A stretch of 62,273 nt of DNA from Ylistrum balloti (lineage: Eukaryota): the NCBI RefSeq assembly GCF_031769215.1, contig NW_026782915.1, positions 1 through 62,273 of the forward strand. The letters are read 5' to 3'. A model generated the notes under the pieces. The model had not been told where the DNA came from, ran no database searches, and saw only the letters and a program-made list of their open reading frames with translations. Every line of letters begins with the position of its first letter. The first letter of the stretch is position 1. Both the position numbers and the translations under genes were made by a program. This document shows positions 1,725 to 61,760 of the stretch, piece after piece.

Positions 1725-1793
1725 TTTCACAAATGACAGTTCGTATTTCTTACATACACCAGTTCTTGATACATTTACTAACGTATTCGCAAT

Positions 1794-1806
1794 ATCCTCG
1801 TCGCCA
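1794..1806 (-). promoter_or_regulatory. Primer binding site complementary to tRNA-Ser(GCU) 3' end
   Basis: Minus strand reads TGGCGACGAGGAT, 3 nt inside the LTR end. It matches the recalled tRNA-Ser(GCU) 3' end ...ATCCTCGTCGCCA. Confidence 0.85.
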
Positions 1807-1809
1807 GAT

Positions 1810-2080
1810 TGTCGTGTCGAATTGAATCAGAGCCCGAATTGAATCATAACACAAAACTGGTCTCGTTCAAATGGCCGCCTGTTTTAATAATAATGCCCGG
1901 ATGTTTCACAAGAACGATAACTCCACACATAAGACAATCAGAGTTATTTCCCATTACTCTACATCTAAACACTACAGGTGTAAAGTCTTTGTACTCGTTT
2001 CAAAGAAAAATACCCAGTTGTAACAATAGGAATTAAATAAAAAAAACATTTGTCCACTTGCCTTCGATTTTGTCACGACA
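1810..2080 (-). repeat. 5' LTR of the Gypsy element (~271 bp)
   Basis: Bounded by 7-bp inverted termini TGTCGTG...CACGACA and adjacent to the PBS. The partner LTR and TSD lie outside the window, so the distal boundary cannot be confirmed. Confidence 0.7.
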
Positions 2081-2474: not shown

Positions 2475-2715
2475 CGGTGGGTTTATAATATCGGAGAGGC
2501 GGCCAGGAAAGCAGTTTATGCTAACGAGATCACATCGAGGGCTGACTGAGGGAAAACAGGTTTCGATTGTGAGACATATTGCATATTTGAAACTTATGCC
2601 AAATATCACAGATTGAACGGCAAACAATATAAGGAGAGATAGGAAAAGGATTAATAGTAGAACAATATTAGAGATTTACTGGAGCAACATTACATGTACC
2701 TTGGCCTCGGACAAG

Positions 2716-15400: not shown

Positions 15401-18400
15401 ACTCTGGAGGAGAGATGAGTTTGTGCATGCCATTTGTGTATACTCATCTGGACCACTGCACAGGTTTCCAAGGCAACGAAGCAATGGCGTTACTATCTGT
15501 AATATTGAGTAAATCTGAACTAAAATTTCCTTGTCTTGACATGCTTGTCTGTATCTATTCAATTCAATATTGTAAAGAAATAGTGAACTAGAGGTGTCGC
15601 CAGGATGTCCTCCCTCGTCCTAAATCGACAATAGTTTTGGAGGGGTTATGCAAGAAATCTTCATTTGGTCACCATGGCAACCATGAGGAAACAATTTCTC
15701 CCCCAAAAATGGTATCATTGTATTTGTCACCCCCTAAACCTTCTAATGACAATTTCAGCTAAATCAGAGAATCAGAAATTCTGACCTATCAGAAGCCTGC
15801 AAAGAGATTCCATGGTTATGGTTTTGGAAGACCTTATATGTTTGTCAAATTATAGGCTATAATTAGCTGAAGCATTTGATCATGTTTAAATGAAAAGTGA
15901 AAGGGCACAACTATATATCATTACGATCATGAGACTCAAACCCATGTGGTATGGGGCCAGTGACTCAAACCCATGTGGTCTGGGGCCAGTGACTCAAACC
16001 CATGTGGTCTGGGGCCAGTGACTCAAACCCATGTGGTCTGGGGCCAGTGACTCAAACCCATGTGGTATGGGGCCAGTGACTCAAACCCATGTGGTCTGGG
16101 GCCAGTGACTCAAACCCATGTGGTCTGGGGGAAGTGACCAAACCCATGCAGTCTGGGGGCCTTATATTGCATACCTGGAATACATGGGGATTTGTGGAGA
16201 CCAGTTGCACGAGGATGTCAACAATCTGTGTCAGAAATCCCAGTTTGACCATTTCTTCAGTAAACTCTGGACTGTGAACAAAAGAAGACCAATGGTCACA
16301 TATTTCCTTTAACAACCAGGAGAAACATGTGATCAAATTGCAGATATCTTAACCTTTATATAACTCCTGTGTGACTTTATGCATGTGTGCATTTACCGGT
16401 AAAATAATATTCATCCTTGATCTATTCTACAAATACCGAAAGACTGTTTCGCCCATCTCAACTTTTTTCAATAAGGTGGAAGAAAACCCAGCAATTTACC
16501 AGGTAGGTTTTAATTATTTGATGGTAAAGCAAACACAATCCTGGGAGAATGTTTTTCCTATATTCCTTTACACTTTTCCCCTGCTGTATCCACTAACTTA
16601 TTAAAGGCAAAAATTTGACTTTACAAATATACAGCTATATCAATTACAAGTATAATTACTGATATACTGATACTATCAAATATATTGATAATTCATTCAA
16701 ATATTTTCCAACTCCCCCATATATATCTTTAATATAGGTTGACATAACATAATCTTAAGTTCAATTTTTATCAGTTCGTAAGCACTCATCATTGTTTTAA
16801 CATGCTTTCTTTTTTATTTGTATGCTGGGATCATTCCAAAAATGAACAGCCAGCAGGGTTTTCCATAAGAGCTGGTCGCCGGCCGATTTGACCGGCTACT
16901 TTGATCATTTGGCCGCCTACACCAATCCAGTTCCGTAATAATGTTCCATACACGACTACACGTACACGGCAGGCCAGCCTCCTACTTTCACTACACAGCC
17001 TACTACTAACAAAATTGTGGAAAACCCTGAGCCAGAGTCATTTTAAGACCGGGCCTCCTTGTAGTAGCTGGTGACAACCTCACTGAACAAAAGGTGGCCT
17101 GTGGCATGACATCCATAGTAATACAGACTCAACCACATCGTTACAGACTGTCCCTTTCTCAGCTTCCTGAGGGACATGAACTGCCACATTTAGAGAGTGC
17201 AAAACAATGCACCTCGGATTTTCACCTGAGGTTACAACATAGGTCAACACTCGAACCGACCAAGCTATCATGGCCGCCTCCATAGAAACAAGTCTTGTAA
17301 GAAAACTTATAAAGCTTTACAAATGGATACAGTATACAATGAAAGTTTATAGAACTTGTAGATACTCAATAACCAAGACACTTTGTTTCCTTCCAAAATT
17401 GTATGGATTATCGAGGGTCCATTGTAAATTTTACTACAAAATTTTATCTGCTTTCAATATAGTATCATTACCGGTTGCTTCACCGATAAATACCTTTTAA
17501 GAAAGACCAGTGAACAGTAATATAAATATTTACAATGTATTTACATGATACTATGTATCATAAAATATAAGAAAAATCCAATGATGAGTGTTCTATTTAT
17601 TGCTCTTTTTAAAGATTGAAGATGTTAAAACGAGAAACCGTGAAAATGACAGAGCTATAGAATTCCATAAATCATTAAATTCATTTCTACCAAAAACATC
17701 TTTTATATCTTAGTAAATTAATGATCAATTGAAAAAAAAACTGTCTTTTTAGTACAGTTTTGTTCATTTACATGAACAATCTCCATGATTTGAGTGAGAG
17801 TCATACCTTGCAGCCAGATAGGTCAGTACCCAGGATACCTCAGTCAAGATGCCTTGGTTTTCTGCTGTGTTCACTAGTAATGTTTGAAGCAAAGGCAATG
17901 CCTTTACATTAACAACCTCCCTACATCAGGAAATAAATGTATTATAATTAGCTTCAGACAATTAGAAAATGTACAAACAATGACAATACTGTAATATCAA
18001 TGATAAAGAAAAATGTCATAATATCTAGTACAAGTTTCCTGTGTACTATACAGTATACCACAAGGTATACAGGGTGATAGGAAAATCTGGGCAAATCTAA
18101 ATAAGGATATCAATTGTAACGAACAAGAGACTGGTTTTCTCTGGTTTTATTAGTTGTAGTCCAATGGTTCACCCAAGGTTTGGGTCTTCTCCTTCATCCT
18201 ACGACAAGTTATGTACCTTAGACTCAAATCCTGGGTGTGAATTAATTCAAAATAGCAAAAGATATATGAGTTTATTGCAAGTCATGGGCTTATTGTCCTG
18301 CATGGGCTTATTGCCAGTAAAAACAGTAAACAGTAAAACAAATCTCAGGACAAGTACAAAATGCTAAGATAACCCCTTAAGGCAACTTCTCTTCCCAATA

Positions 18401-21400
18401 CAGTTGAATACTGATGTTGTAAATATAAACATAAATTCCTGTTATGTTTATGGAAGAAGTCTCCAGATATGTTTAAAATGCTGAAATGGAGGGGTTTTGG
18501 TAAATTACTCTTTTTTTCTTCTTCTTATTTTTTTAATCAAAATGCTGTTCAGCAAAACACAATTTGATGTCATAATAATATAGGCTTTCAAGTTCTAACA
18601 AAACTTAAAAGCCATGCTGATTGATAATATAAAGTTTGAAAGAGCTGAAAGCTGAAAAAAAGAACGTCAAACAAAAGACATTTTATGATAGAAATATGTA
18701 TGGATCATGGACGACATACCATAAATAGTGTCCAGTTAAAAAAATGTGCAGAAAGTATTTTGGAAAAGATTAAAAGAATACCAGAAAAGATTATAGAATT
18801 ATACTATAAGCCAATAGTAAACAGAAGAATTCTTACCTCTATAACTTAAAAGACCCAAGATGATTGTACAGTTATCCCCCTTACCTTGCTATATCATGTG
18901 ATTCCTTCACCAGATTGGACAAGGCAAATGAAGCTGACTGCACAACTGATGGATGAGGAGACTAAAATGAAAGTTGAAATATTTTGATTTTTTCAAAACT
19001 GAAATTCAATCTCTGGAAATACAGGTTTTAGATTTCATAGAAATAACAATTTTTGTGGAAAACTGAAAATGATTACAACAGCTATTTATTGGGTTGTGTG
19101 ACTGCTAAACCTTGCATGTATACAAGTTAAAATGGTACATAGCAGTGATAATTCAAAATAAAAAATCACACCATGCTACTATTTTGAAATATAGGACATA
19201 TTGTAAAGAAAATTTACTGTATAAAGGACTACTTTGCCACAAGTGAATGTTGCCACTTGATGACATACTCACAATATCTAATTTTAGCAATGTTATTACA
19301 TTTATTTATTGTTGCGTCATGTTCTAGCCAGATTTGGGTGGTGAAGGAAAATTGGAATTCTCTTGAGAAAATCAGACCTTGCCATACAATCATCTGGCAA
19401 AATTAAGACAGAGGTGAAAAAAAGCTGTTATGCAGTATTTCCCCATTTTTTCTCTTTCTTCATTTCAAATTCCGAAAACTGAAAGGTTTGACATAATGAG
19501 TAAATGAAATGTGATCTTTCACTGGATTAATCATACTTCATGGAGGAAGTGAGTTGTAGGAGTTAGAACTAATAAATTTACCTGTAAAAGCTACAAAATA
19601 CAGATTTACTTGTAGAAATCAAAACAAATTTACCTGTAGAAGTCAAAACAGATTGATCTGTAGTCTGACTTAAGGTAAAATACAGATTTACCTGTAAAAA
19701 TCAAAATAAATTTACCTGTAGACGTCAAAACAGATTGATCTGTAGTCTGACTTAAAGTAAAATACAGATTTACCTGTAAAAATCAAAATAAATTTACCTG
19801 TAGACGTCAAAACAGATTGATCTGTAGTCTGACTTAAAGTAAAATACAGATTTACCTGTAAAAATCAAAATAAATTTACCTGTAGACGTCAAAACAGATT
19901 GATCTGTAGTCTGACTTAAGGTAAAATACAGATTTACCTGTAGAAGCTAAAATACAGTTTTACATTGTAGAAGTTAAATAAGATTTACACGTACCTGTAA
20001 AAGCTGTACAAGAGGGAAGACAACTCCCTGGGCGTGTATCAGGCTACGACTTTCTTTACTATCCCCTGCTAAATTTCCTAGGGCCCATGCACTCTGGTCC
20101 TGACAAAGTAACATAAATTAGAAATTGTTGGTAGGATAAGCATTTCCTCTCTCTCATGCATATAATTTTCATTGTGAGATGAACTTGAACTTTTCAAATG
20201 TGACCTTTGACCTTTCAACCTTGGCAGGTGACCAACTTCATACAATAAAGTGTAGAACTATATGGTAAATATGAAGCAAAGATATTTAGACATTTAGATA
20301 TTTAGATATAGCACTGAGTCCAAGTGGGGTGGTATATTTAATTTCATAATATACGCTCACCTGTATTACTGGTACAACACTGCTCAGGTAAGTCACAAGG
20401 TAAGGTGCGATGTATTTAGCAACAGCGACAGCATGTTGGTGGGTACCTGCCGATATGTTAGTTATACACCATGCTGCCTCCTGTTGTAGCTCAATATCCT
20501 GTCCAGTGTATAGACCCACCAGCCAACTCAAGGAGTTTTCTATACTGTGAAATTCAAAACAGCCACCTCAATGAATTATCTATCTAAAAAAGTCATTTAT
20601 TATAGTTGTAGAACTTTAGAACATGACACACAAGTTATACTCATCATATGCTGTTATATGCTGGTAAATTATTACATCAATCTGCATTTTAAAGATTTGT
20701 AATGGTTTATTATTGCCTAAGGTTCACTTAAAGACGGGCCAGGTTTGGGTGGTTCAGGAAAGCTAGAGTTCCCAGAGAAAAATCAGCAACCTGTGGTTGA
20801 AACCTGATGTCTGCCCAATATTACATGCCTCAAACCTACATCCCAGAGGTGGAGGACAAATGAAAATGACTGTCAGACATCTTAAGCCATCATGGCTCAG
20901 GACTTGTGACCAGTATATATAGTGATACATGTAAAACTATGGTAGAGATAGTACTGGGTACACATTCAATCAGATTCTGTTTAACAAATAAAAAACGTTT
21001 TAACTGAGTGAGTGGATCAACTGACTGAAGAGAATTCAAGATAATGTGTTATATGTGGAAAGCAATTCTTTATAATAATTGTAATAGTGAGCTTGAACTT
21101 TTACCTGAAAAGCAATCCACCCTTGTTTTATCACCTTGTGAGTGTGGGCTTAATACATATAAAGGCAAAAAAGTAGTATTTCTTGAACGTGATTTTACAG
21201 AACAGTGTAAGTGAGTAGAATTATATTGCCAGACATGAATAAATATACACTGATGAAAATATCTCACCTTTAGACATCTGGTTTAAGATTTGGAACCCAA
21301 TAGAACACAACCACAAAGCATGCGTGCCATATATACATAAGATCAACTTTTGTCCTTAGTTTAGTGTTTTCAATATGCCTTTATTAAACAAACACTGGAA

Positions 21401-22656
21401 TTTTATTATCTGATAATCTATTGATACATTTTTATTATCTGATAATCCATTGATACATTTTTATTATCTGATAATCTATTGATACATTTTTATTATCTGA
21501 TAATCTATTGATACATTTATAAAATATAAGAAGCAAGTACTTTAAAGGGATAAAATCTAATTTACCTGAAGAAAACATCGATGTACACTGTGCCCTGAGA
21601 GAAGGCATGTTTTAAAAGTTTCAGGTTTTCCAGTCGATGTGCACCAGGTTTTTTGAGACCACAAGTGGCATTCCTCACCTCATAAAAGCAGAACAGGGTC
21701 TTTTAATACAGTTATAATTTCATAAACAAGAGGCCCATGGGCATTCAGGGTCATATTACTATAAAGACCTATATATGAAAGAAACCAAATTGGCCTAAAA
21801 TAAATTGCTCAACTACATTACAGCTTACATAAAAGACATTGGTTGGTTCATAAAGACATCTTCTGTGAATATGAAATCTTATCCTTTATACACAATTGCC
21901 ATTACTATGGACATATTGCTTGTTGAAAAACAAGGCCCGTTATCAAGAACCTTGGCCTTTTATTTACTGAGAAGTTGTTTATGCATTTCAACACATTTAA
22001 CCCTTGTGACCTTGACAGTAGGTTTAACTGTTTAACTGACATTTTAACAAACTTGATAGCCCTTATCATATTCTGCAGTCCAGTACCTGGTGTTTTTCTT
22101 GCATGTTCAACTCGTCCAACCATTTCAACTGCTTATGCGAAGTTGCCCTTATATACTATACACATGATCTTATATTACGGTAGCTAACTATAAAGACAGC
22201 AAATAATGCATACCTCATCTTGTGTGACTTCTACTCCAGCCTCAGCCTCTGTTATATACCGGAATCTCTTGGCATTTACAGCTTTGTCCTTCTTCTCCTT
22301 CCTTAATGCTTCGTAATTAACAGATCAACATTTGGTTGGCATTATTGCATGAATTTTATGACAGATACACGCAACTGCATGCATATCAATTGGGTTAGTT
22401 GATAATACATTTCCTGATATCGTCACTGAATAAATTAGATAAATAAAAAATCAATGCCAGTTGTAAAATGTCTTCGCCTCTACATTTACACATATCGCAC
22501 ATTTTTTTGTTTGTTTGTTTTTTAATTTTGAAAAGTGAATGAAAAAACTTGAAAATTCAGTATAAATGTATTTAACAATGCAGCATACATCTTTTTATAC
22601 ATGTAATATGTTGAATAGTTATGAATTGAAATTCATAATAATTATACTGTATAGAT

Positions 22657-39265: not shown

Positions 39266-42200
39266 TTACATGCCTTTCCACTTCAATGCAAAGTAACCCA
39301 GAATACGAAAACCGATGATAGATAAAATTAAAGTTAATACATAGCAATGAAGATGCAGATCTATACCAACTCCTGCCAAAACATCTTGTGTCGTCACCAT
39401 TTCTGTCTTGTTCAAAATGCATTGTGGGTATGACGTAACACTTGTCTCGTTGCACCTTCAAAATAAATAAAATGAAAAATTCATAGGAGAAATTAAAAAC
39501 ACAATAAGGTAATATTTATGTTATATTCTATCATAAATAGCGAGTAAAGTTTTCTTTTTAAAGGAATACAACATACTTGTAAAGATATAATTTCGTCATC
39601 TTTATATAGGCTACTTGCCTGATATTCTCCATATCCTTCAGCATATATATCATAGTCGCAGCATACGGATAGTGAACCAGTGAAATATATTTACTCCAAA
39701 CTAACCAAGATGGTGGATGAATGTTGAAGAAGCCACCTAAAACAGTAACGTCGATAATTCTTTATTGCTGTTATGTCAGAAAATAGTTATTCGCAACTGC
39801 TATATTTCATCAAAGAATGTGAAATAGATACACCAGCGAATAAAACATTTGCATTCGAAAATTATAATAATAATAATAATAAAATAATGAATTCTAAGAC
39901 TTACCAGCGACTTATTAGGTCGAAATAAATGAAGGGATAAAAAAGATAATTATTTTTAAAACAAACTGATCTCCAAAAACGTCAAGTACATGTTTTTATT
40001 CTGAACCGCGTCACCAGTGAATGAATATATAATATCGTAGAGCCAAACAATATATTGTAATATATCTAACTGTATCTTACAGCTATTTATTCCGTCTAGA
40101 ACTCTTCAGTGATTCTAAGGGCATAATTTGTTGAAAAAGGCGACTGAAGAAAATTATTAAAATTTTATTGGTCGAAAGATTTTTTTAAAAACTTAGAACT
40201 TAGAAACTTAGAATGAATGTGCTAAAGGCAAAAGGCAATAAAGCCCTTTTCGAGGGACAAGGTTACCCAGTAACAAACCGCCGATGTTGAAACAGTCCAT
40301 GACAAGCATGCTTAGTGTCAGATCATTAATACAGACACCTATAACGTGTGCCAAACTCTGAAAAATAATTATTAAGTTTTTTATCGTTGACAAATCTTGA
40401 ATCTTTTCAATATTTTTTAAATCTTACATTCTCGTTTTCCTGAATTAAACATGAATATAACACGAGACTCAAAGCATTAAAATGTTAATTGTTTTTGACC
40501 ATTTCTTCTGGTTAAAATTTTAAACGTTTTTCAGTTTCTTAACTTTATTGTCGACTCATCTGTTTAAATCAATTAATAACAAAATATAATTACACGATGA
40601 AATGGTATTTTGATCGTAACATTAAAGTGATATAAAGGAAAAATGTATCAACGAGAAAAGAATACAGATTGTATGATAGTCCACCTCTCCGCTAACGAGA
40701 TTGTATTCAGTGGGAATATTTCATAGAAACATACACGTCAATCATATTAATATTATTATTATTAATATTAATATCAACACATTACTTACTTGTATCAGAA
40801 GGCAATTGAGAATTCCAAAACCACAGTAGGCAAAATATACTTCTACTCCTCCAAGGCCAGCAGCCCAGTAAACAGCCGTGTTGAACAGTGTTGGAATGAC
40901 CAATAATAGTGGCAACTCAGTGGTCATCTTAGACAGATAATAGGCCGATAATCGATAGACTCCTACTGACCGTTCCTTACGTATAACATCGGTCTCCTTA
41001 TGCACTGTAACGGTTGACAGAACGCCTTTTAAGCAGATATTTCACGTATATTTGTAAGATGAAAAAATCTAAAATGTCGACATAGAAATGGCAATAAATT
41101 CTCACATACTTCACAGGGAGGCCTCGTGGTAGCTAGGGATGAGGTAACTCTATCTAACATAGGATAAGGATTACGTATTATCTAACTTAACCATACAACA
41201 AATACATACCGCATTTCAAGGGATATGGATAATGGCGTGATGAACAGATTTGACAAAATCTAATTTAATACTGGTTATTTATGCGAGGAAAATAAGCAAA
41301 CAACTCAGATGACCGCAAAATAAAGTAAATCAAATATATATATATATATATAGACATCACAATAAAATGTAAACATAAAAAAGACAAAATGTGATGACCT
41401 AAACATGAATTACTTGAATACAGACTTATATTTTGTAGTGGTAAGAATTGTCTAATTTATGCAGGTTTATTTAATTCGAAAATTATAGATGAAAATGTAA
41501 TCAAAAATAGTGATTTCAATAATGATAGTACTTACAATTCCAAATAGTAGCGAATCTAATCCGAAGTCCCCAGTGCAACAAAGAGAAGAACACCTGCATT
41601 AACAAAACATCAATTAAAATGTTTGTTTTAATTCATTCAGGAGCTTACAATAATTCTGACAGAATCACGCTGCAGCCGCAATATTTAAGAACATTAAGCA
41701 CATTTATTAAGAACGTGGGAATGATATATACATGTATAAAACAAGTCGGACTTCATAAGAACTAAAGAACAAATTTATCATTTAACGTGGTAGAGGCCAG
41801 AAAATAAAACACGCAGTGTATTCAACTGAATCAGTTCTACCATACATTTATAACTGTCACAAGTGATAACAGCCGAACAGCAAAATGTTCAGGTTTTTAT
41901 GCTACAATCTAATTTAATTTCATGATATCATGTTGTACTGTCGATTTGATCAATTAACAAGAAAACCTGATTTAAATTCAAAAGGCCAAAGAAGACTTAA
42001 CTATGAGAAATTGATAGATAAACGATTGAATGGCAGATTCTAAAATTGCTTCATTTTTTAAATGAGCAGTTCACATAAAAAGCCTGAACAAAACTAAGAT
42101 AAAGGAACTAACAAAGTAAACATAATACACACCACGTATACATTTACACACGCATACAAATACACGCACATTAATTTCAGCATATGTACACACAATCAAA

Positions 42201-45200
42201 GACATAAATGTACATTTGAAGACTTAGACCAAAATGATAACATTTGCTCACTAATTATTCGACAGTAAACTCTATAGAAACATCAAACCAATCCATGCAA
42301 AATCGCAGAGATCTTTGTACATTGCCATAATATAAATTATCCACAAAATCTACAACATATGATTTATGGTTATATCTGAGATACAGTTTTAATGCTAATC
42401 TTACCAGACCCATTTTGTCTCTCACAGTTCTTTCTACATTGTCAATTTGAAAGTATACAGCCCCTACAACGAGCGCCAGAAATACGGCGTGGATTATGTA
42501 GTACTTCTTAAATATTTGACCTTTAGACTGCTTTAATATTCGCCAGTTTAGCATCTTCAGCTGGTGAAGCATTGATGTTGGCCATCGAGGCACAGCTTTT
42601 CCTTCTTCCATAACAAATGCTCCACCACTGCACATGGACAACTGTGAACCTGTTTTTGAACATAATGTATTTTATTGCAAAAAACGAAGGCTATGGCGTA
42701 ACATGCCTTTGTAAAGGAATGAAACATTTGTTCTTGTGCAACAGGAACACTTGTTTTTTGTTGTTTTTTTTAAAAATCAAATCAGATGCGTAGCGATTTT
42801 TATTAATTTCTAAACGTTCAGATGAATTTATTTACGGCTTACTTCTATTATAGTTAAATTTTAAAAGTGATGTATCTTAGCATTTAATGGCCTCCTAGAG
42901 GAAAGCGGGATATTCAACATTCCAGATGTCCGTCTAACCGTTTTCACGGAAACCCTTATTAGCCCATAAAAAATCAGGAAAATACTAACATGGCAACAAA
43001 GTCATAATTCAAACTCTAATTCTTGAACTCGTTACACACCAGGAAAGCTATTACAGGTTCCATGAAGAATGCTTTTGTTCCAGTCATTGTCGACATGTAG
43101 CGGTTTCAATTCATTTTCGTCACCTGTGTACGAGTATCTTCTCCTTCCCTGTCCTTTCCCGCGTACCGGAGGATATATTCTGAAACAGAGCACGACACGT
43201 TTAAGTCGTTTTATCATTATGTTTGAAAATAACGAAAAGAAATAGTAATATGCTGAAGAAAACTTCGAAAAATGCAGTTTGTAGATCAATATGGATATGT
43301 TTTTCAGATAAATATATATATATATATAGTTTCAGCTAGGGCGAAATGCTCCGTAAATGTCCTAACACGAAAGAAAGTATAGGGGATGTGTATTCTCACA
43401 TTCTATAGGTGATCAATGTCATGGGTTTGTTTAGTTGGTTATACCCTTTTCCGAATGTTCGACGAATGGAAAAGATGTAATGCCATGTTACAAATACTCA
43501 CGAGAGCAAAATTGTATTGACGTGAACGAGTGTAAGATCGAAACTCGAGATTTTCTCATTCAAAGGCGTCACATTGCATATTGAATCATGTAGCTATTGC
43601 GCTACAGTTGAAACAATAAGAACTATAAACATTCACAACTTCGCTAGTAATTATTACACGTGTAGTAATAATACGGCGTTATTACATTTATATCAAGATA
43701 GTTACGTGATCGATAAAATTATCAATAAAGTTAAACAAACCATCCTTTCATAAGGATGGCGCATCAAAGAAATGATTATTTCCTTTTAGTTAATAATGAC
43801 TAACTTGCGAACTTCTATGTGAAGCAACAAAGCAACATATGTTCATTTGATATTTGTTGAAGCAATGACGTTGTAAAACTACCCTTGATATGTGTAATAC
43901 ATTGCTCACGCAAAACGAAAGATCGGACCTGTTCAAATAATTAAAAAGACGTTTGGTTTTCCAATCACTAATTTTCGATGGAACTGGTTTTTGTTGATGT
44001 CTTGCAGGAAATGTAAAAAATATGATCTAGGAAAATTTGAAACCATCGATCTATTTCCATCTCAAGTTCCCGTTATTGATGAAATTCAGATGAGAAGTGT
44101 CATTTTTTTATCATAAAGATTATTTTCGTGGGAAACGAGAATATTAAAACGCAACAATCTGGTTTATGTAATCACCAAATATAATCGATAATCTAAACGC
44201 TTTCAAACTTTCTTTTGTTTGGTATTTTTCTAATGATCTCCTCATTGCAAATTGTTTCAGTTGTAAGGTTTTCTTGGTATGAGTTTGCACAAACGCTAAC
44301 CACTACAAAACTAGCCGATAGTAATGTCAAGGAAATTCGACCTAGATGTATTATATTATGCAGTGTTATTGTATACTACTATTAATCTATATAGATAATG
44401 AGAAAATATACAGAAGAGCATTGTGTATCATGTATTATAACAACGGAGATTTAACTTACTTAATGGTTTTCCCATTTTCCTTCAATATATCAATTGTTTT
44501 TGAATCTGATGCCAGCTGTTCCACTTAAACAAAAACACAGAAAATTTAGACAGGTCAACATATCTTATGTATAGACTCGATGAAGCTATTGAATGCTGAA
44601 TGCTAATATGTACACAAATATTTACATGGAGACCTCTGACAAAATATAAGGGAAATTAGACCAGGAATAACAGAAGGGCAAGTGTCTTTTGGGTATTCGA
44701 GAAACCAGCCTTATATAGAGCAAAATCTAAAACAACCAAAAACGAAACATCCATACCTCAAACGTCATATTAAATAATAAAATATTTTTTCTATAATGTT
44801 CATAAACGTACTGCTCGAAAAAATCTTTGTGTTGATTTACCCAAACAACTGTCGTCATAAAAAATCTTGATATTTGAAACAAACACTTAATTATCAGACA
44901 AACTTCGATATGGCAACTCCATCGGTTGGAGAAGCAGGTACAGTGTAAGTTACTTTTAGTAATGGAGAATTTACAAAAAACAAAAACAAAAAAACAAAGA
45001 AAACAAAAACAAACAAAAAACGACATCATTACACTCATTTGGAATAGGCATGCCTTAGTGAGAGTTCATACAAGCAATATTTTTAATAATCAATATCTAT
45101 ATAACGTACATCGAATGTCAATAGATGAAATATAACGTATATAGAAATTTACTAGCTAAAACATAATTTACATAGAAATTTACTAGCTAAAACATAACTT

Positions 45201-48200
45201 ACATAGAAAGTCAATATATAAAGATATAACTTACATAGAAAGTCAATATATAAAGATATAACTTACATAGAAAGTCAATATATAAAGATATAACTTACAT
45301 AGAAAGTCAATATATAAAGATATAACTTACATAGAAAGTCATAGAAATATATAAAGATATAACTTACATAGAAAGTCAATAGATAAAACATAACTTACAT
45401 AGAAAGTCAATATAACTTACATAGAAAGTCAATAGATAAAGATATAACTTACATAGAAAGTCAATAGATAAAGATATAACTTACATAGAAAGTCAATAGA
45501 TAAAACATAACTTACATAGAAAGTCAATATATAAAGATATAACTTACATAGAAAGTCAATAGATAAAACATAACTTACATAGAAAGTCAATAGATAAAGA
45601 TATAACTTACATAGAAAGTCAATAGATAAAACATAACTTACATAGAAAGTCAAATAAAGATAGAAAGTCAATAGACATAACTTACATAGAAAGTCAAAGA
45701 TAAAACATAACTTACATAGAAAGTCAATAGATAAAAACATAACTTACATAGAAAGTCAATAGATAAAACATAACTTACATAAAAAGTCAATAGATAAAGA
45801 TATAACTTACATAGAAAGTCAATAGATAAAACATAACTTACATAGAAAGTCAATAGATAAAACATAACTTACATAGAAAGTCAATAGATAAAGATATAAC
45901 TTACATAGAAAGTCAATAGATAAAGATATAACTTACATAGAAAGTCAATAGATAAAAGACATAACTTACATAGTAAGTCAATAGATAAAATATAACTTAC
46001 ATAGAAAGTCAATAGATAAAGATATAACTTACATAGAAAGTCAATAGATAAAGATATAACTTACATAGAAAGTCAATAGATAAAAAACATAACTTACATA
46101 GAAAGTCAATAGATACTTACATAGAAAGTCAATATATAAAGATATAACTTACATAGAAACATATAAAGTACATAGAAAGTAATATATAAACATAACTTAC
46201 ATAGAAAGTCAATAGATAAAACATAACTTACATAGAAAGTCAAAAGAAAGTCAATATATAAAGATATAACTTACATAGAAAGTCAATATATAAAGATATA
46301 ACTTACATAGAAAGTCATAACTTATAGAAAGTCAATAGAATAACTTACATAAAGTCAATAGATAAAACATAACTTACATAGAAAGTCAATAGATAAAAAA
46401 CATAACTTACATAGAAAGTCAATAGATAAAACATAACTTACATAGAAAGTCAATAGATAAAGATATAACTTACATAGAAAGTCAATAGATAAAAAACATA
46501 ACTTACATAGAAAGTCAATAGATACATAGAAAGTCAATAGATACAAAAAAAACATAACTTACATAGAAAGTCAATAGATAAAAACATAACTTACATAGAA
46601 AGTCAATAGATCATAACTTACAAAGAAAGTCAATAGATAAAACATAACTTACATAGAAAGTCAATATATAAAGATATTATACATAGAAAGTCAATAGATA
46701 AAACATAACTTACATAGAAAGTCAATAGATAAAACATAACTTACATAGAAAGTCAATAGATAAAACATAACTTACATAGAAAGTCAATAGATAAAACATA
46801 ACTTAATAGAAAGTCAATAGATAAAACATAACTTACATAGAAAGTCAATATATAAAGATATAACTTACATAGAAAGTCAATAGATAAAGATATAACTTAC
46901 ATAGAAAGTCAATAGATAAAGATATAACTTACATAGAAAGTCAATAAAAAACATAACTTATAACTTACATAGAAAGTCAATAGAATATATAGAAAAAAAC
47001 ATAACTTACATAGAAACAATATATAAAACATAACTTACAAAGAAAGTCAATAGATAAAACATAACTTACATAGAAACAATAGTAAAGATAGATAAAACAT
47101 AACTTACATAGAAAGTCAATAGATAAAACATAACTTACAAAGAAACAATAGATAAAACATAACTTACAAAGAAAGTCAATAGATAAAACATAACTTACAT
47201 AAAAGTCAATATATAAAGATATAACTTACATAGTCAATATATAAAGATATAACTTACATAGAAAGTCAATATATAAAGTCAATAGATAAAAACATAACTT
47301 ACATAGAAAGTCAATATATAGATAAAACATAACTTACATAGAAAGTCAATAGATAAAAAACATAACTTACATAGAAAGTCAATAGATAAAACATAACTTA
47401 CATAGAAAGTCAATAGATAAAAAACATAACTTACATAAGTCAAAGTCAATAGATAAAGATAAAAAACATAACTTACATAGAAAGTCAATAGATAAAAAAA
47501 AAACATAACTTACATAGAAAGTCAATAGATAAAGTCAATAGATAAAGATATAACTTACATAGAAAGTCAAAGATAAAAAACATAACTTACATAGAAAGTC
47601 AATAGATAAAACATAACTTACATAGAAAGTCAATAGATAAAACATAACTTACAAAGAAAGTCAATAGATAAAACATAACTTACATAGAAAGTCAATAGAT
47701 AAAAAACATAACTTACATAGAAAGTCAATAGATAAAGATATTACGTACATAGAAAGTCAATAGATAAAACATAACTTACAAAGAAAGTCAATAGATAAAA
47801 CATAACTTACATAGACAGTCAATAGATAAAACATAACTTACAAAGAAAGTCAATAGATAAAAAACATAACTTACATAGAAAGTCAATATATAAAGATATT
47901 ACGTACATAGACGGTCAATAGATAAAACATAACTTACATAGAAAGTCAATAGATAAAACATAACTTACAAAGAAAGTCAATAGATAAAACATAACTTACA
48001 AAGAAAGTCAATAGATAAAACATAACTTACATAGAAAGTCAATATATAAAGATATAACTTACATAGAAAGACAATATATAAAGATATAACTTACATAGAA
48101 AGTCAATATATAAAGATATAGCTTACATAGAAAGTCAATAGATAAAACATAACTTACAAAGAAAGTCAATAGATAAAACATAACTTACATAGAAAGTCAA

Positions 48201-51200
48201 TATATAAAGATATAACTTACATAGAAAGTCAATATATAAAGATATAACTTACATAGAAAGTCATTAGATAAAAAACATAACTTACATAGAAAGTCAATAG
48301 ATAAAGATAGAACTTACATAGAAAGTCAATAGATAAAAAACATAACTTACATAGAAAGTCAATAGATAAAAAACATAACTTACATAGAAAGTCAATAGAT
48401 AAAACATAACTTACAAAGAAAGTCAATAGATAAAAAACATAACTTACATAGAAAGTCAATAGATAAAGATATAACTTACATAGAAAGTCAATAGATAAAA
48501 AACATAACTTACATAGAAAGTCAATAGATAAAACATAACTTACATAGAAAGTCAATAGATAAAACATAACTTACAAAGAAAGTCAATAGATAAAACATAA
48601 CTTACATAGAAAGTAAATAGATAAAAAACATAACTTACATAGAAAGTCAATAGATAAAGATATTACGTACATAGAAAGTCAATAGATAAAACATAACTTA
48701 CAAAGAAAGTCAATAGATAAAACATAACTTACATAGAAAGTCAATAGATAAAACATAACTTACAAAGAAAGTCAATAGATAAAAAACATAACTTACATAG
48801 AAAGTCAATATATAAAGATATTACGTACATAGACGGTCAATAGATAAAACATAACTTACATAGAAAGTCAATAGATAAAACATAACTTACAAAGAAAGTC
48901 AATAGATAAAACATAACTTACAAAGAAAGTCAATAGATAAAACATAACTTACATAGAAAGTCAATAGATAAAACATAACTTACATAGAAAGTCAATAGAT
49001 AAAGATATAACTTACATAGAAAGTCAATAGATAAAGATATAACTTACATAGAAAGTCAATAGATAAAGATATAACTTACATAGAAAGTCAATAGATAAAA
49101 CATAACTTACAAAGAAAGTCAATAGATAAAACATAACTTACATAGAAAGTCAATAGATAAAACATAACTTACATAGAAAGTCAATAGATAAAACATAACT
49201 TACATAGAAAGTCAGCTGGATTATAATGCTCTCCGCATGATATTCCAAGGCCAGAGCAGTAACCTATTGCTGAACTAGCATGACCAAAATATGCCATCTG
49301 CAAGAAAGATTTAGAATTTAAAATAAATAACCAGATAATACCAACATGTCAACATTAAGATAATCCTTATTCCAAGCAATATTATCATGCATCAGTTTTG
49401 AAGTAATGCATTAATATTCTGCCGCAATTACAATATTTGATTTATTTTGTCGGATGAAGAATGTCGAATGGCTTTTGTACAGAAAATGAATATCTTAATG
49501 ACAGAATTTCATTAATTATAAATCATATACCGTATAATTTTATGCAGGGTTAAATGTGCCTTTCACTTCTTGTATGTTCCATTTTATGTTATGAGATGAT
49601 TTGTCATTGCAAAGGTTTATCATTATACATTACTCCTTTTCTATTAAAAGTATTAAAAGGTTGAAAACACAATTATCAGGTAATCTGACGCTTAATTAAA
49701 GATCTTAATAATATTTTAGGAAACACAGACTGGATAGATCTTCCACAACGAGATCCAAGTCCAACTATAAAACAAAACTCTCCAAACTAATCTCTTAGTT
49801 TTTGAGTGCGCGATAGCAGTTTGGTCTGATGCGATTTCAGGTAACGATCCACGACTTTTGGTTCTGTGCCTGTCTGTAATATGTTATGTTTCTCACAGAC
49901 CTAAGGTCACAATATTAATCAAGAACTTTTCTCATATGACATAATCTTGATTAGTCAGTAGCTATACTGTCGGGGTAGCCTACTCATGCTAACATACTCA
50001 TGGATGTAAACGAGGGGATAACCTTTGCTTGTTCTAATTTCTTCAAGGTTTTGACTTAATTCAAATTGAGATTACATTCTAAGTATACCTACCTCCCCTT
50101 CAACAAGAAGTAGTAAGGTGGAGAACATGTGAAAGACTTGACTTGAGGGCTGATGAATAGTGGCTACTATTGTCTTATTGAACTCTGTTGCGTAGTTTTT
50201 CAGCTGGACCATCAATGTATATGCAGTGCTGGAGTCTAAACCTGAGGTTGGTTCCTTTGTGATAATTGTAGTTCGAGATGAGTTAAATCAGACGACTATT
50301 TGAAATATTATAATTGAAGTTATCTGATGAAAGTCATAGATTATTCGATCATTGTAGAACTTCAGAGAAATAGAGTAATTATCGATTCCACAACCACAAT
50401 CATAATCAGCTATAGGTTTAGATCAGCATGAGTGTTTATTCAGTTTGAAAAACTTATTTGCTAGTCAAAAATGATACAAGATACTCTGTACAGCATTTTT
50501 TGAAATCCTTCCCATAGTTTTGCGACCTTATTCGCATCATAGACATTGGGTTATCTCCAATTTGCGTCAATACATACATAATAAACGATTTGTTGGTACA
50601 TGTAGACGTAATTAGTTTCACACAAACATGAAAAATATTATATTGTTTGGTTAAGGAAATTTCGATTTCTAAGGAAGACATATACAAGGAGGGTTACCAT
50701 GTGACTTGTAACTGAAAGTAGAACAGTCAAAAGCTCCAACATGACAGAAGAAAGTATCGATTCACCCTAAGTGTGGTGTGTTTTGACTGTTTGATCTTTG
50801 ATAGTTTTGAATCTAACCAGTGCACAGGGCGAATAACACTATATAGTCAACGAATGCATAATTAGTACCATCATATATGCTGTAGGTTCTGCAAACACTT
50901 CAAAACAAAAATCAAAACAGACCAGATTGGGAGAAAATCCATGCAAATTTCGCTTATATGTCAATCTTGTTGACTCCTGAAGTTAAGACTGAGTTTTTCC
51001 GGGTAACAGAAATTTGAAAAGTTAAGTTAAACAATAGGAAATGTTAAATGACAACTGACGAAGACAGATTCCAGTTTTTAAAATCCAACTTACATCTAAA
51101 AGGAGAATATCTGGGTCCGTCAACAGCTCACACGCAATACTAGCTCTCTTTTTCTCCCCTCCAGACATTCCTGATATACTCAACTTTCCTGATGTTTCAA

Positions 51201-57702: not shown

Positions 57703-60051
57703 TTATTCCTCCGTGTTACCTTCATCATCACTCTCATCAATACTGATTGGGTCTGGTGTATAACTGGCATCTTGTAAATATTGTGTCCAGTCCTTACTAA
57801 AGTCAAAGGACTTGTCTAAATGACGTGCAAATCCCATATACCATAAGATGGATGCAACATGGGAGCAAGTCCCAACCACCCTCGCCCCAGCACGGCATGT
57901 ACAGTACCATCCTTGCACATTACAATCATCAAATGATACCCACAATTGGTAAAGTTTTGAGGAAAAATGTCGGCTCTGTATCTTGGCATTGATCAGATTA
58001 GCATCTACTTTACAGATAGATACTTCATATCCTCCCGTTTCGCTCATATGTTCCTGTGTGTAGGACCGTGCCAGTTTGAGCTGATACACTCCCAGTGTCA
58101 AATTCCGCAGGTCTTCTTCTGTCAGAACAGGAAATATGATATCAGTTGTGGTCTCCATCTTCTGCCACTTACTAGGTCGATTGAAAAGGCCTTCTCGTTC
58201 AATTCTCTCCCAAAGAGAATTCTGCTTCCGTGACAAATGCAACATTTTCGATCCTAGCAGTTGATCTTGCTCTGCATCCCCCGTGCTTATTGGTGTACCG
58301 AACTTGTTGAAGATTGCACACACAATCCTGACAATATCGCCTATGTATGGAATCTGTGAGTTTGGCAACACACGATCCAAATATTTCCAGGTTTTTAACC
58401 GTCCATTCACAGCCTCAACGACCCATCTGAAAAATAGTAAATAGATGCATTTTGAATGTGAATAAATGCAGTATTCAAATGCATATGATGGTAACTATAT
58501 CAAATAAATTTTGTTTTCAATTTCGACATCTTCTAAATGGACAGGTTTATGCAGTTCAACTTATAAAATCGAAAGTATCTAATTCTCACTGGGAATTACC
58601 TTTAACCATTTTAATGATATATTAATACAAATAAGTTATAAATATGTTGTAAAAGCAATTGGTAAAGTTAGTAAAATGTTACTCAGAACAAAGAGAGACC
58701 TTACCTTATTTTAGTAACAAGCCTGGAAGCGTTGCTTTCTCCGGTAGTGTGCTGTTTCCTTTGCTTGGAAAAAGAAGGCATCTCTGTTTGTATTCCTAGC
58801 TGTTGTAGGAGGTCCATGGAATCTCTAAAGCCTCTGTCAACCACAAACACATCATTTTCCTGAATCCACTCCTTGATTTCTTGAATGTTGGAATTTAAAA
58901 TCTGATTCAGGATGCTGGCATCATTGTTTTTGGAATCGGCAAAATAGGGACCTAACACGGACACTATGTAACCTGTTGTGGTGACAAACATCATAGGTTT
59001 TACCAACGGCCGGTGCTTATGCATGCTGTAACTCCTCCTTTGGAACATAAATTGGCCACTCTTTTGTATATAAATGTAGGTGCCATCAATTACAAGAATG
59101 GCTGGTTCCATAAGTCCTCCAAACAATGTTTGGGCGAGTGGTCTTGTGTGTTTCAGTATAACATCTTGTCGACTTACATGCTGAAATCCCAGATTTGATG
59201 GAACAAAGTCTTTCGCTAGTGCAACTCTTGCCGATGTTACTGCACGTCGAATAGAATCTTTTCCAATGTTAAAAACTGTTGATAGGACTTTATTTGACAT
59301 GCCACTTTTTAGTTTAGTAAGAAAGATGCCGACACAAGATTTAATGCTCCTATTCTGAAGATCGCACAGAACCAGCACAGTGAGTACACAAATCGTTAAA
59401 ATGCTGTGTACATAGTCCAGTTAGTGTAATGAAATCTTCATTCGAAAGGGCATGCGGTGAGTCAAAGTCAATGCGTTTGCTTTGCTGTGTATTTGCTACA
59501 TCTCTAATCTTAGAAATCAATGCCACTATTTCAGTACGATTAAGAGAAGATAGGTCACTTTTTATAGCAATGTTTTCACAAGCATCATTTTGCAATAGAC
59601 CATCCTCGATATGATGACTACAACATCTTGCTCCGAACGGAACTAAAACCCCTTTTTGCAGGAAGAGGTCGTATTTCGCGTCACGAGATATTACCACCAG
59701 TTTCTTTGGGTAAGTATTGCATACAAAACATTTTTTGTGGCTACTTCCAGTGGATGGGATTGAAAGTGTAATATTCCGCGGCGATGAAAGGATGTTCTTT
59801 GTTGATTTATTACAAGGGGCTTCAACTGAAGAGTGGTGTTGAGCGATGTGTGTACGACGCTGTAGTATTGAGCGATGACATGACATACGACACTTTCCAC
59901 AAATGACATCTTCTTCTTTTGTTTGTATCATATATGTTTTCAACAAATATTTTCTTAGTGAAGAGTTTTCCTTGCCTTTAGTGAAGCGCCTGTCCCCAGG
60001 TTTTGTTCTCTTAGAACAAACAACACACCGAAATTCTCCCTTTCCAGGCAT
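57703..60051 (-). mobile_element. PIF/Harbinger-ISL2EU-type (DDE_Tnp_4-like) transposase gene with HTH and C-terminal SWIM finger; one intron, one frameshift
   Basis: ATG 60051 lies just after an acceptor. Segment 60051-58705 has a frameshift near 59352; intron 58704-58427 (GT-AG); exon 58426-57703. Triad LVIDGTY / VVDRGFRD / RWVVEAVNGRLK, HTH-like FITLTG...[31 protein letters not shown]. About 690 aa if repaired. TIRs were not identified. Confidence 0.88.
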
Positions 60052-61760
60052 CCTAAACAAATAGATACTAACTATATTAAAATATGTCCCAAACATCAGA
60101 AACTAAAGGGCGTCTGGGCATTTACTTATTGTATGTTGAATAAATATGAAACATTGTATCCATCACTTGTTGTTTATACAGTGTATCATGCAATACTGAT
60201 CTTCATAATGTTATTACAATGATTTATCAAACATGTAAATTGATGTGTTAACAGGGACCCGAGTCAGATATGAGCATTGCTTTGACTAGGTGTTAAATAT
60301 TTGTATTACTTTACTAGAAGTCAATAATTGCTTTATTATACAGTATATACTGTATGAAATAATAAAATAATAGCTATTTTAGAAGCTGGTAGCTGGACTC
60401 ATATGAAGTAATCGAAAATGTTTATCATTGTTTTTCATAAATAGCCAACAAGGAAAGACTGGACAAACAATTGGAGGGAGACAGACAGTGACAATTACAT
60501 TAAACACATGTATAATAGAAAAAAAACCTGTTTTTATTACAATACATATATCAGTCACCTTTTTTAAAATAAAATATTGTAGTTGAAACGGAAATAAACA
60601 TGATAATGAGAGAATTCTCCTCCAAGTATTTCAGATTTCTGTTACTTAACAATTTGAAGCATAGAAATAAGATTAATTCAGGAACTTCCTAAAACACTTA
60701 CATGTAACTTCAAGAATCTCCAGGCATTTTCTCGCTACTCTCTGTCTCCTATTACATCACTAGTAAACCTTAAAGAATGAAAATAATGAAAATAAATAAT
60801 CTATTAAATCTTAAGTTCGGTGAAAAATCTGATTTTTACAAAACTTTATTTTAAAGAGTAGCTAATGTATATTATGCCAGTGTCAATCTGTTTTAAAAAA
60901 ATATATATCAAGCCAGTGTTTCGTATGTTTCCCGTAATTTGTTTTTGGTAACAGTACATGTAGCATTGATACTGGCTATACAGTATATCTGGAGCATATA
61001 AACACGTTTATATATACATGTAAGCATGTACATGTATATACTTCATTTAGTTATTCAGGGATGTGCCATTATAACAAGAGTTCTCCGAAATATACAAGCC
61101 AATAAACTAACTGCAGCCAAAAATGAAGCTAGGTCAAAAATATCAAATAGCCACAATATAATAATGTTCGATTCATTGTGCTGACGAAACTTACAAAGCA
61201 GAAGACTTACGTTTAATTTCTGAATCAAATGTATCCATAAAAATATTTGAATTCAGGTCCTCAGGATCGTTATGTTACTGGGATTCTTCAAAAGAAAATA
61301 TACATGGTAAGATTTTTCATCGTATTAATTTTACAATAGTATAAATGAGAGAAATTATACCCTAGCCCATAAGAATTAACACTTTAGTTTCTGCACGTAT
61401 ATGCTGATTATTTGATGCTAGCAAAAGTAAGTCCGACGCAAAAAATATATATAGAAAAAAAACTACCCTAGGTCGATAACAATTCAGCAAAATGACATCT
61501 AACGCGATGTAAGAGTTACAATATATCCAAAAGAAATATTTGTAACACCAAGACTATCGATGCAGATATAATTGTTTGTATTAGAATGCAAGGATATTTA
61601 TATGGAAAAATACATGTAGCAACATGATATAACGTCCTGAAAATATTCTAATATTTATAATTATTAATTCTATCAGTACATTATTGATGAATATAACTAT
61701 TAAAATCGAGAATAATTGAGGTGAAAGTTATAGAAAAAAAATAAGAATAAAAAATAATAT

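What the first reader, a model, noticed from the sequence alone, without database searches (positions are those of the whole stretch)
44524..49297. A 4-kb satellite made of the gene's own exon end plus 5' splice site: ~130 tandem GTAAGT donors
Seen: ABCG exon 6 ends ...AAT CCA GCT GAC TTT CTA T|GTAAGTTATGTTTTATCTAT. The satellite unit on the sense strand is TGACTTTCTAT|GTAAGTTATGTTTTATCTAT, so the first unit overlaps the coding exon (A-D-F-L) and supplies the real donor at 49203. The array fills ~87% of the 4.7-kb intron. Variation sits mainly in the T-run while GTAAGT is kept in most units. Copies nearest the exon are the most uniform and those at 45121-45200 are degenerate. Using any later donor reads C-K-L-C-F-I-Y-stop, truncating the transporter before its TMD. 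Known: GTAAGT is the perfect intronic U1 snRNA match, and U1 binding also suppresses premature polyadenylation. Inference: a junction-seeded satellite acting as a U1 sink or decoy-donor array, whose copy number could tune productive versus NMD-targeted splicing. An independent second case at 19575-20005 suggests a general mechanism that I do not recognise as described.
Basis: partly seen in the sequence, partly recalled or inferred. Interest (0 to 1): 0.85.

Follow-up and report, generated by a model that had tools for sequence, protein, structure and literature searches.

The report
Splice-junction minisatellite in a scallop intron
A scallop transporter gene has copied the last 11 bases of one exon plus its splice signal about 128 times into the next intron; this kind of repeat is already known (amphioxus "mirages", the human F7 repeat), and nothing here shows that it has a function.

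Summary
Window 45101-49214 (minus strand) is a 31-bp minisatellite of about 128 units. Its first unit is the last 11 nt of ABCG exon 6 plus the first 20 nt of intron 6. There are 117 exact GTAAGT, and the array fills 88% of the 4,680-nt intron. The window is Ylistrum balloti contig JAUZWB010000966.1.

The junction is ancestral. The Mizuhopecten orthologue and four Ylistrum paralogues have the same 94-nt exon ending at GTAAGT or GTAAGC, and none has an array there. So the array was seeded from the junction after the two scallop lineages split.

The functional reading (U1 sink, tunable decoy donors) is not supported. GTAAGT is kept no better than other invariant hexamers of the unit, it decays in the oldest distal units, and the array is not conserved.

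The claim that this is undescribed is wrong. Minisatellites whose first unit spans an exon-intron boundary are known in human F7, CBS, IFI6, LMNB2 and PDGF, and in amphioxus as "mirages". In F7 only the first donor is used.

What stands out here is the size, and that the type recurs. I found four more junction-spanning arrays in about 270 kb of scallop DNA. The scan has also noted this type on many other pieces of this genome.

The parts
49204..49297 (-). ABCG exon 6 (94 nt), ending in the codons for N-P-A-D-F-L. Its last 11 nt (49204-49214) are the first 11 nt of the repeat unit.
   Evidence: Spliced mapping of P0151. The exon is 94 nt in four paralogues and in the Mizuhopecten orthologue. 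Protein alignment A2 supports this end.
49198..49203 (-). Authentic 5' splice site GTAAGT (phase 1), the first of 117 identical copies.
   Evidence: Sequence. A conserved GTAAGT or GTAAGC donor lies at the same position and phase in L001, L002 and L004-L007.
49189..49194 (-). GTTTTA, the donor used by the public RefSeq model. It adds C-K-L to the protein and is probably 9 nt off.
   Evidence: The P0151 mapping gives a 103-nt exon 6 with this donor. The CKL insertion is absent from all seven homologues aligned.
45101..49214 (-). 31-bp minisatellite of about 128 units. The five main variants have 26, 16, 13, 12 and 11 copies. 117 units carry GTAAGT.
47593..48042 (-). Block that is 99.6% identical (2 mismatches, no gaps) to 48515-48964, at a lag of 922 bp. 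This is a recent multi-unit duplication inside the array.
   Evidence: blastn of the block against the array and autocorrelation. Identical 63-nt compound units lie at 48870 and 47948.
48515..48964 (-). Partner copy of the 922-bp-lag internal duplication.
45093..45213 (-). Decayed distal edge of the array. The last four units carry 2, 5, 6 and 9 edits, and the donor hexamer has changed to GTAAAT, ATACGT and GTACGT.
44524..45100 (-). Unique 3' part of intron 6 (577 nt), with the acceptor AG at 44524-44525.
44460..44523 (-). ABCG exon 7 (64 nt; [10 protein letters not shown]...). It is 64 nt in three of the paralogues too (L005-L007; L004 has no counterpart).
19575..20005 (-). Second junction-derived array, in an importin-alpha-like ARM-repeat gene. 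It has nine TACAG|GTAAAT copies in an 82-bp higher-order unit. The 14-mer AGCTTTTACAGGTA is shared by the real junction (20005) and the last unit (19592).
   Evidence: Arm Pfam hits on the flanking exons.

Best explanation
This is a 'mirage'-type minisatellite. A 31-bp tandem duplication happened to span the exon-6/intron-6 boundary of an ABCG half-transporter gene in the Ylistrum lineage. Slippage and unequal exchange then amplified it to about 128 units (4.1 kb).

The duplication is silent because the most upstream donor, the one attached to the 94-nt exon, is the one chosen. That choice would follow from exon definition and from the 5'-to-3' order in which sites appear during transcription. 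The 116 downstream copies then lie inside the excised intron. Any use of a later donor would carry an in-frame TGA and be degraded.

The array is most likely neutral or slightly costly ballast, not a regulatory device. At most it could have side effects on splicing efficiency that depend on copy number, as reported for human F7 and CBS.

Shown: the structure, the junction origin, the lineage specificity, and the lack of donor-specific conservation. Inferred: the first-donor rule (by analogy with F7) and neutrality.
For: - Array anatomy and its overlap with the exon.
- The junction is ancestral and array-free in the Mizuhopecten orthologue L002 (94-nt exon ending at C|GTAAGTAAC, no 31-bp array in an intron of at most 1.9 kb) and in paralogue L001.
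- Four Ylistrum paralogues have a 94-nt exon 6 with a GTAAGT or GTAAGC donor in phase 1.
- The family consensus NPADFLLExL is restored only by the first donor.
- The gene is intact, with 14 exons and ABC_tran plus ABC2_membrane domains.
- The donor hexamer is not specially conserved. It decays in the oldest units.
- Turnover by block duplication, 99.6% identity at a lag of 922 bp.
- Experimental precedent: in the F7 IVS7 37-bp VNTR, identical functional pseudo-donors stay silent and the most upstream site is always chosen. Other human genes are listed there: PMC1557585.
- Amphioxus mirages do not disturb splicing: PMC3087553 and PMC3902484.
Against: - No RNA data were available, so use of the first donor is inferred. 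In human IFI6 and CBS the first two pseudo-sites are also used.
- In the F7 experiments, pseudo-sites with a perfect consensus match could shift splicing toward themselves. Here every copy has a perfect +1 to +6 match.
- In vitro work (from memory: Eperon and colleagues) found that, among strong duplicated donors, the one nearest the acceptor is preferred. That would predict trouble for this gene.
- Junction-spanning arrays look commoner than uniform seeding predicts (see the rival explanations), so the origin may not be pure chance.
- The public model uses a different donor, 9 nt downstream.
Confidence: 0.72

Rival explanations
1. The array is a functional decoy-donor array or U1 sink. The 116 extra perfect U1 sites would titrate or recruit U1 snRNP on the nascent transcript. 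Copy number would then set the balance between productive and NMD-targeted splicing, or would protect the transcript.
For: - 117 perfect GTAAGT copies sit in one intron.
- Every later donor leads to the same in-frame stop.
- VNTR length correlates with expression or splicing at human F7 and CBS (from memory, not checked here).
Against: - GTAAGT is kept no better than other hexamers of the unit.
- The donor is mutated in the oldest units.
- The array is absent from the orthologue and from all paralogues.
- The intron has no AATAAA and one ATTAAA outside the array.
- One gene's introns cannot deplete a cell's U1 pool (general knowledge).
Confidence: 0.08
2. The array is one product of a process in scallop genomes that is biased toward the 5' splice site. 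Either tandem duplications start preferentially at donors (for example through transcription- or splicing-linked DNA damage and repair), or junction-anchored arrays persist longer. Persistence could arise because their first unit is protected by selection and keeps re-seeding the array. This concerns origin, not function, and is compatible with the best explanation.
For: - Outside the index window, 3 of 12 intronic arrays in five genes span a donor and none spans an acceptor. The three are L007 exon 7 (69 bp x 5), the L004 neighbour gene (53 bp x 3.7) and L001 (35 bp x 51). My estimate under uniform seeding is about 0.66 expected, Poisson p about 0.03.
- In the window, 2 of 5 intronic arrays span a donor and 2 more start within about 50 nt of one.
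- All units carry only a short exon part (1-4, 11, 12, 14 and 27 nt).
- The exon-proximal units are the freshest and the distal units the oldest.
- Many unchecked first-reader notes, and one follow-up, describe the same thing elsewhere in this genome.
Against: - The sample is small, the null model is rough, and the p-value is marginal.
- The window cases were picked because of this feature.
- Minisatellites are very dense here (about one per 5-6 kb) and the introns were short before the arrays grew (0.3-1 kb). Chance, plus the silence of donor-spanning duplications, already predicts many cases.
- The donor-versus-acceptor asymmetry is expected from selection alone.
Confidence: 0.2
3. The array, or its copy number, is an assembly artefact.
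For: - Only one assembly of this species is on record.
- The 99.6% identical 450-bp blocks and the indel-rich patches at about 47630-46944 and 46323-45981 could reflect assembly or polishing noise.
- An amphioxus mirage was mis-assembled in a draft genome.
Against: - The array has ordered variant subfamilies, a decaying distal edge and unique flanks on both sides within one contig.
- Similar arrays occur at other junctions and in a second species' assembly.
Confidence: 0.05

Closest known systems
Human F7 intron 7 37-bp VNTR (Borensztajn et al. 2006, PMC1557585)
   Same: It is a minisatellite whose first monomer spans the exon-intron boundary (4 nt of exon plus 33 nt of intron). The authentic donor is therefore followed by identical pseudo-donors. 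These are functional but silent, because the most upstream site is selected.
   Different: F7 has 5-9 copies of a weak donor (TGG|GTGGGT). This array has about 128 copies with a perfect GTAAGT, 11 nt of exon per unit and 4.1 kb of array. Splicing has not been tested here.
Other human junction-spanning minisatellites: IFI6 (6-16) intron 2, CBS intron 13, LMNB2, PDGF intron 4 (listed in PMC1557585)
   Same: The donor is reiterated in the intron by a minisatellite that starts in the exon. IFI6 has 25 pseudo-sites and CBS 15-20 repeats.
   Different: [quoted passage not shown] All of these arrays are five-fold or more shorter than this one.
Amphioxus 'mirages' (Adh3, TnC, globins, PGBD5; PMC3087553, PMC3902484; original description Canestro et al. 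2002, cited from memory)
   Same: This is a named class of minisatellite-like tandem duplications of exon-intron boundaries in an invertebrate. They are length-unstable, recur across genes, do not disturb normal splicing, and show concerted evolution with diverged edge units.
   Different: Amphioxus mirages have few units (3-6 in the globins) and affect both 5' and 3' boundaries. The arrays I examined here all involve donors, and this one is far larger.
Recursive-splicing (ratchet) sites
   Same: They are intronic copies of a 5' splice site consensus.
   Different: A ratchet site needs a 3' splice site (pyrimidine tract plus AG) directly before the GT. The ABCG unit has CTTTCTAT before GTAAGT and no AG. 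Only the second array (TTTTTACAG|GTAAAT, 19575-20005) has that look, and it is untested.

Membership tests
Junction-spanning minisatellite ('mirage' / F7-IVS7 type) | Tandem array of units of tens of bp | tested here: met
   31-bp period, about 128 units.
Junction-spanning minisatellite ('mirage' / F7-IVS7 type) | The first unit spans an exon-intron boundary, so the splice site is reiterated in the intron | tested here: met
   11 nt of exon 6 plus 20 nt of intron; 117 GTAAGT.
Junction-spanning minisatellite ('mirage' / F7-IVS7 type) | The junction is the source and the repeats are derived, rather than a dispersed satellite that matches an exon by chance | tested here: met
   The same exon end and a GTAAGT/GTAAGC donor occur without an array in the orthologue and in five paralogues. 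The unit is absent elsewhere in the window and in the fetched loci. The whole genome could not be searched.
Junction-spanning minisatellite ('mirage' / F7-IVS7 type) | Normal splicing uses the authentic site and the repeated sites stay silent or nearly so | not testable with these tools
   No RNA data. The public model yields an intact 632-aa protein without array sequence, apart from 9 nt.
Junction-spanning minisatellite ('mirage' / F7-IVS7 type) | Length instability or polymorphism | not testable with these tools
   Only one assembly exists. The internal 922-bp-lag duplication at 99.6% identity indicates recent turnover.
Selected U1-binding / decoy-donor regulatory array | The donor motif is conserved above the rest of the unit | tested here: not met
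   GTAAGT has 117 copies against 115-121 for other invariant hexamers. It is mutated in the oldest units.
Selected U1-binding / decoy-donor regulatory array | The array is conserved in related species or paralogues | tested here: not met
   Absent at this junction in Mizuhopecten L002 and L001 and in Ylistrum L004-L007.
Selected U1-binding / decoy-donor regulatory array | U1 occupancy and a copy-number-dependent splicing outcome | not testable with these tools
   This needs CLIP, RNA-seq or minigenes.
Recursive splice (ratchet) sites | A 3' splice site (Yn-N-AG) juxtaposed directly to GTAAGT | tested here: not met
   The unit reads ...CTTTCTAT|GTAAGT, with no AG before the GT.

The most novel reading that the evidence does not exclude
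Scallop genomes may generate or retain minisatellites anchored on 5' splice junctions well above chance. This could happen through a mutational process linked to the 5' splice site, or because the selected first unit acts as a protected master copy that keeps re-seeding the array. Arrays of more than 100 perfect donors, like this one, would then measurably affect splicing kinetics or expression according to allele length. That would make these loci natural VNTR rheostats and an extreme natural test of how the spliceosome chooses among identical donors.
Probability: 0.15. Interest if true: 0.65.

Novelty: new member of a known kind. Interest (0 to 1): 0.35.

Why it matters
As a single locus, this is an unusually large example of a known curiosity. 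It is useful mainly as a natural substrate for asking how one donor is chosen among 117 identical perfect ones.

The practical points are these:
- Such arrays mislead gene predictors. The public Ylistrum model is probably 9 nt off at this junction. Two Mizuhopecten models read into introns or arrays, and one also skips an exon.
- The arrays seem frequent enough in scallops to contribute noticeably to intron growth. This one took intron 6 from about 0.6 kb to 4.7 kb.

If the excess at donors is real genome-wide, it would point to a mutational or persistence bias at 5' splice sites that has not been quantified.

Tried and rejected
- Dispersed satellite matching the exon by chance: rejected. The unit occurs nowhere else in the window or in six other scallop loci, and the exon part is the conserved NPADFL codons.
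- Selection on the donor: rejected by per-position and per-hexamer retention. My first segmentation was anchored on TGACTTTC, which biases positions 1-8. The hexamer count is free of that bias.
- Telescripting need: there are no AATAAA signals in the intron.
- Recursive splicing in the ABCG array: there is no AG before the GT.
- Independent reads: an exact-ORF look-up for the exon-6-plus-first-unit reading frame found nothing. P0001 was not on record.
- The 29-bp array at 15933-16158 is not junction-derived. It matches the exon end at only about 41% of positions and starts about 12-16 nt into the intron.
- Literature searches for a bivalve-specific description of junction arrays found none. 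PMC4039745 (C. elegans minisatellites) was not relevant.
- The ARM gene's full annotated model was not retrieved because of the length limits of the protein search. Its exon ends rest on reading frame, splice motifs and Arm Pfam hits.
Full report
**What is there.**

TRF finds a single array at 45101-49214 with a 31-bp period, about 130 copies and 83% matches. Read on the minus strand, the sequence shows an exon ending ...AAT CCA GCT GAC TTT CTA T followed by GTAAGTTATGTTTTATCTAT. The 31-mer TGACTTTCTAT|GTAAGTTATGTTTTATCTAT then repeats.

A dynamic-programming segmentation gives 128 units. The array holds 117 exact GTAAGT, of which 100 are preceded by TAT and 17 by TTT. There are also 5 GTACGT and single other variants. 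A 21-nt core of the unit occurs 112 times (up to 3 mismatches), all inside the array, against 0.01 expected.

The intron runs from 49203 to 44524 (4,680 nt), and 88% of it is array. Reading through the first donor gives C-K-L-C-F-I-Y-stop, so every later donor would truncate the protein.

**Host gene and organism.**

A profile-free search with one TMD exon, followed by a full-length search, identified the window's own protein. It is P0151, 632 aa, 'LOC132563754 [Ylistrum balloti]', on a contig of exactly 62,273 bp. The look-up gives GCA_031769215.1, JAUZWB010000966.1.

P0151 has ABC_tran plus ABC2_membrane domains, so it is an ABCG half-transporter. It maps to 14 intact exons on the minus strand.

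The public model does not use the GTAAGT at 49203.
- Four Ylistrum paralogues (L004-L007) and the Mizuhopecten orthologue (L002) all have a 94-nt exon 6 ending in phase 1 at GTAAGT or GTAAGC.
- The family consensus is NPADFLLExL.
- The three extra residues of P0151 have no counterpart in that consensus (alignment A2).

**Direction of derivation.**

The orthologous Mizuhopecten yessoensis locus (L002) has the same exon ending ...GCTGACTTCCTTC|GTAAGTAAC. The next mapped exon lies within 1.9 kb, and there is no 31-bp array. A Mizuhopecten paralogue (L001) has ...GACTACTTGT|GTAAGTTTG and again no array.

The junction is therefore ancestral, and the array is a derived, Ylistrum-lineage expansion of it. 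The unit is absent from the other six fetched loci. This excludes the idea of a dispersed satellite that matches the exon by chance, as far as the available data reach.

**Anatomy of the array.**

Five unit variants account for most copies (26, 16, 13, 12 and 11). They differ at unit positions 10, 21-22 and 28.

The first ten units average 0.8 edits from the junction copy. The last four carry 2, 5, 6 and 9 edits. There are two indel-rich patches in the middle.

A 450-bp block (48964-48515) is 99.6% identical, without gaps, to 48042-47593 at a lag of 922 bp. Other registers give about 94%. This indicates recent growth by unequal exchange of multi-unit blocks, unless it is an assembly duplication.

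**Is the donor under selection?**

No sign of it. Exact copies of each consensus hexamer were counted across the array:

| Hexamer | Exact copies |
|---|---|
| GTAAGT | 117 |
| TGACTT | 121 |
| GACTTT | 119 |
| TTGACT | 119 |
| TAAGTT | 119 |
| ATTGAC | 117 |

The donor is as well kept as any non-polymorphic part of the unit, and no better. In the three oldest distal units the hexamer reads GTAAAT, ATACGT and GTACGT.

The intron has no AATAAA and one ATTAAA, which lies beyond the array. A role in suppressing premature polyadenylation therefore has little to act on. Together with the absence of the array from the orthologue, this leaves the U1-sink or tunable-decoy idea without support. It cannot be excluded without RNA data.

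**Comparison with what is known.**

The class is described.
- Borensztajn et al. 2006 (PMC1557585) studied the human F7 intron-7 37-bp VNTR. Its first monomer is the last 4 bp of exon 7 plus 33 bp of intron. The 4-8 identical pseudo-donors are functional but silent, because the most upstream site is selected.
- Their introduction lists further genes with a minisatellite whose first monomer spans an exon-intron boundary: IFI 6-16 (25 pseudo-sites), CBS intron 13 (15-20 repeats), LMNB2 and PDGF. In the first two of these, the first two pseudo-sites are also used.
- In amphioxus such repeats are called 'mirages' (Adh3, TnC, globins, PGBD5). They are reported not to disturb splicing, to be length-unstable, and to show concerted evolution with diverged edge units (PMC3087553 and PMC3902484).

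An earlier follow-up in this scan (s1-258768) pointed me to the amphioxus term, and I checked it in the papers.

The present array meets the structural criteria of this class. Its splicing behaviour and polymorphism could not be tested. It differs in scale (about 128 units against 3-26) and in having a perfect +1 to +6 U1 match. In the F7 experiments, only perfect-consensus pseudo-sites could shift splicing toward themselves. Some leakage to later donors is therefore plausible here.

**Recurrence.**

At 19575-20005, in an importin-alpha-like ARM-repeat gene, there are nine TACAG|GTAAAT copies. The 14-mer AGCTTTTACAGGTA is shared by the true junction and the last unit.

Using exact spliced mapping of annotated proteins and TRF on other scallop loci, I found three more donor-spanning arrays:

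| Locus | Position | Unit x copies | Exon nt in unit |
|---|---|---|---|
| L007 | exon 7 | 69 bp x 5 | 12 |
| L004 | neighbour gene of the one fetched | 53 bp x 3.7 | 27 |
| L001 (Mizuhopecten) | 58-nt exon | 35 bp x 51 | starts at the donor |

Outside the index window, that is 3 of 12 intronic arrays spanning a donor and none spanning an acceptor. A rough uniform-seeding estimate gives about 0.66 expected (Poisson p about 0.03). This is my own calculation.

The result is suggestive, not established. Minisatellites are very dense in these loci and the pre-array introns were short. The donor-versus-acceptor asymmetry is also what selection alone would produce, because a donor-spanning duplication is silent and an acceptor-spanning one is not. 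Many unchecked first-reader notes describe the same pattern on other pieces of this genome.

**Verdict.**

The functional interpretation is unsupported, and the novelty claim is incorrect.

The best reading (confidence about 0.7) is a lineage-specific, probably neutral 'mirage' minisatellite, kept harmless by first-donor selection. The open and more interesting question is genome-wide: whether scallops produce or retain such arrays at donors above chance. That needs an annotation-wide count and RNA data.

Noticed in passing
window 49189-49203: The public RefSeq model for LOC132563754 (P0151) splices exon 6 at T|GTTTTA, 9 nt past the conserved GTAAGT donor. This adds C-K-L, which no homologue has. 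It is probably an annotation error induced by the repeat or by mis-annotated scallop proteins.
   Followed up: yes
L001 16722-18549 (Mizuhopecten yessoensis NEDP02076718.1): A 58-nt ABCG exon, orthologous to window 41536-41593, is skipped by gene model P0002. A 35-bp x 51 array (unit CGTAAGTAATATTTTGTTGACCTTATCATGCTAGC) starts exactly at its donor. A 43-bp x 41 array ends about 22 nt before its acceptor.
   Followed up: partly
L001 19566-21287; also P0001: The Mizuhopecten gene model P0002 runs on from the LLIQ exon and takes its C-terminus (TTAGDKETT...QRQQQEIRRQQ...) from a 35-bp x 43 array at 19766-21287, about 200 nt into the intron. Both P0002 and P0001 also read into the intron after NPAD(Y/F)L.
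   Followed up: partly
L007 19490-19833 (Ylistrum balloti JAUZWB010001056.1): A 69-bp x 5 array whose first unit contains the last 12 nt of ABCG-paralogue exon 7 plus its donor. Here the junction copy has diverged from the other units, which suggests an older array.
   Followed up: partly
L004 33684-33955 (minus strand; gene of P0225): A 53-bp x 3.7 array repeats the last 27 nt (9 codons) of an ABCG exon. The authentic copy is followed by GTGAGT; the two downstream copies are followed by TTGAGA and GGCGTA.
   Followed up: partly
window 15933-16158 and 21401-21518: Two 29-bp arrays in the ARM-repeat gene start about 12-16 nt and about 47 nt downstream of (putative) donors, without containing them.
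   Followed up: partly
window 10203-11536: A 56-bp x 18-22 array (168-bp higher order), open on the minus strand as an acidic repeat (SDASDDEDSASLDTD...). It lies downstream of the ARM-repeat gene's last coding exon (about 12426). It is either 3' UTR or intergenic; its nature is unknown.
   Followed up: no
window 57703-60102: ORFs like a PIF/Harbinger transposase lie upstream of the ABCG gene. The called gene (376 aa) has DDE_Tnp_4 and DDE_Tnp_1 hits.
   Followed up: no
window 1-1826 and 2617-8634: A retroelement gag-like ORF with CCHC knuckles lies on the minus strand at the window's start. A multi-exon cytochrome P450 gene lies on the plus strand and has a 23-bp x 8 intronic array at 5178-5356.
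   Followed up: no
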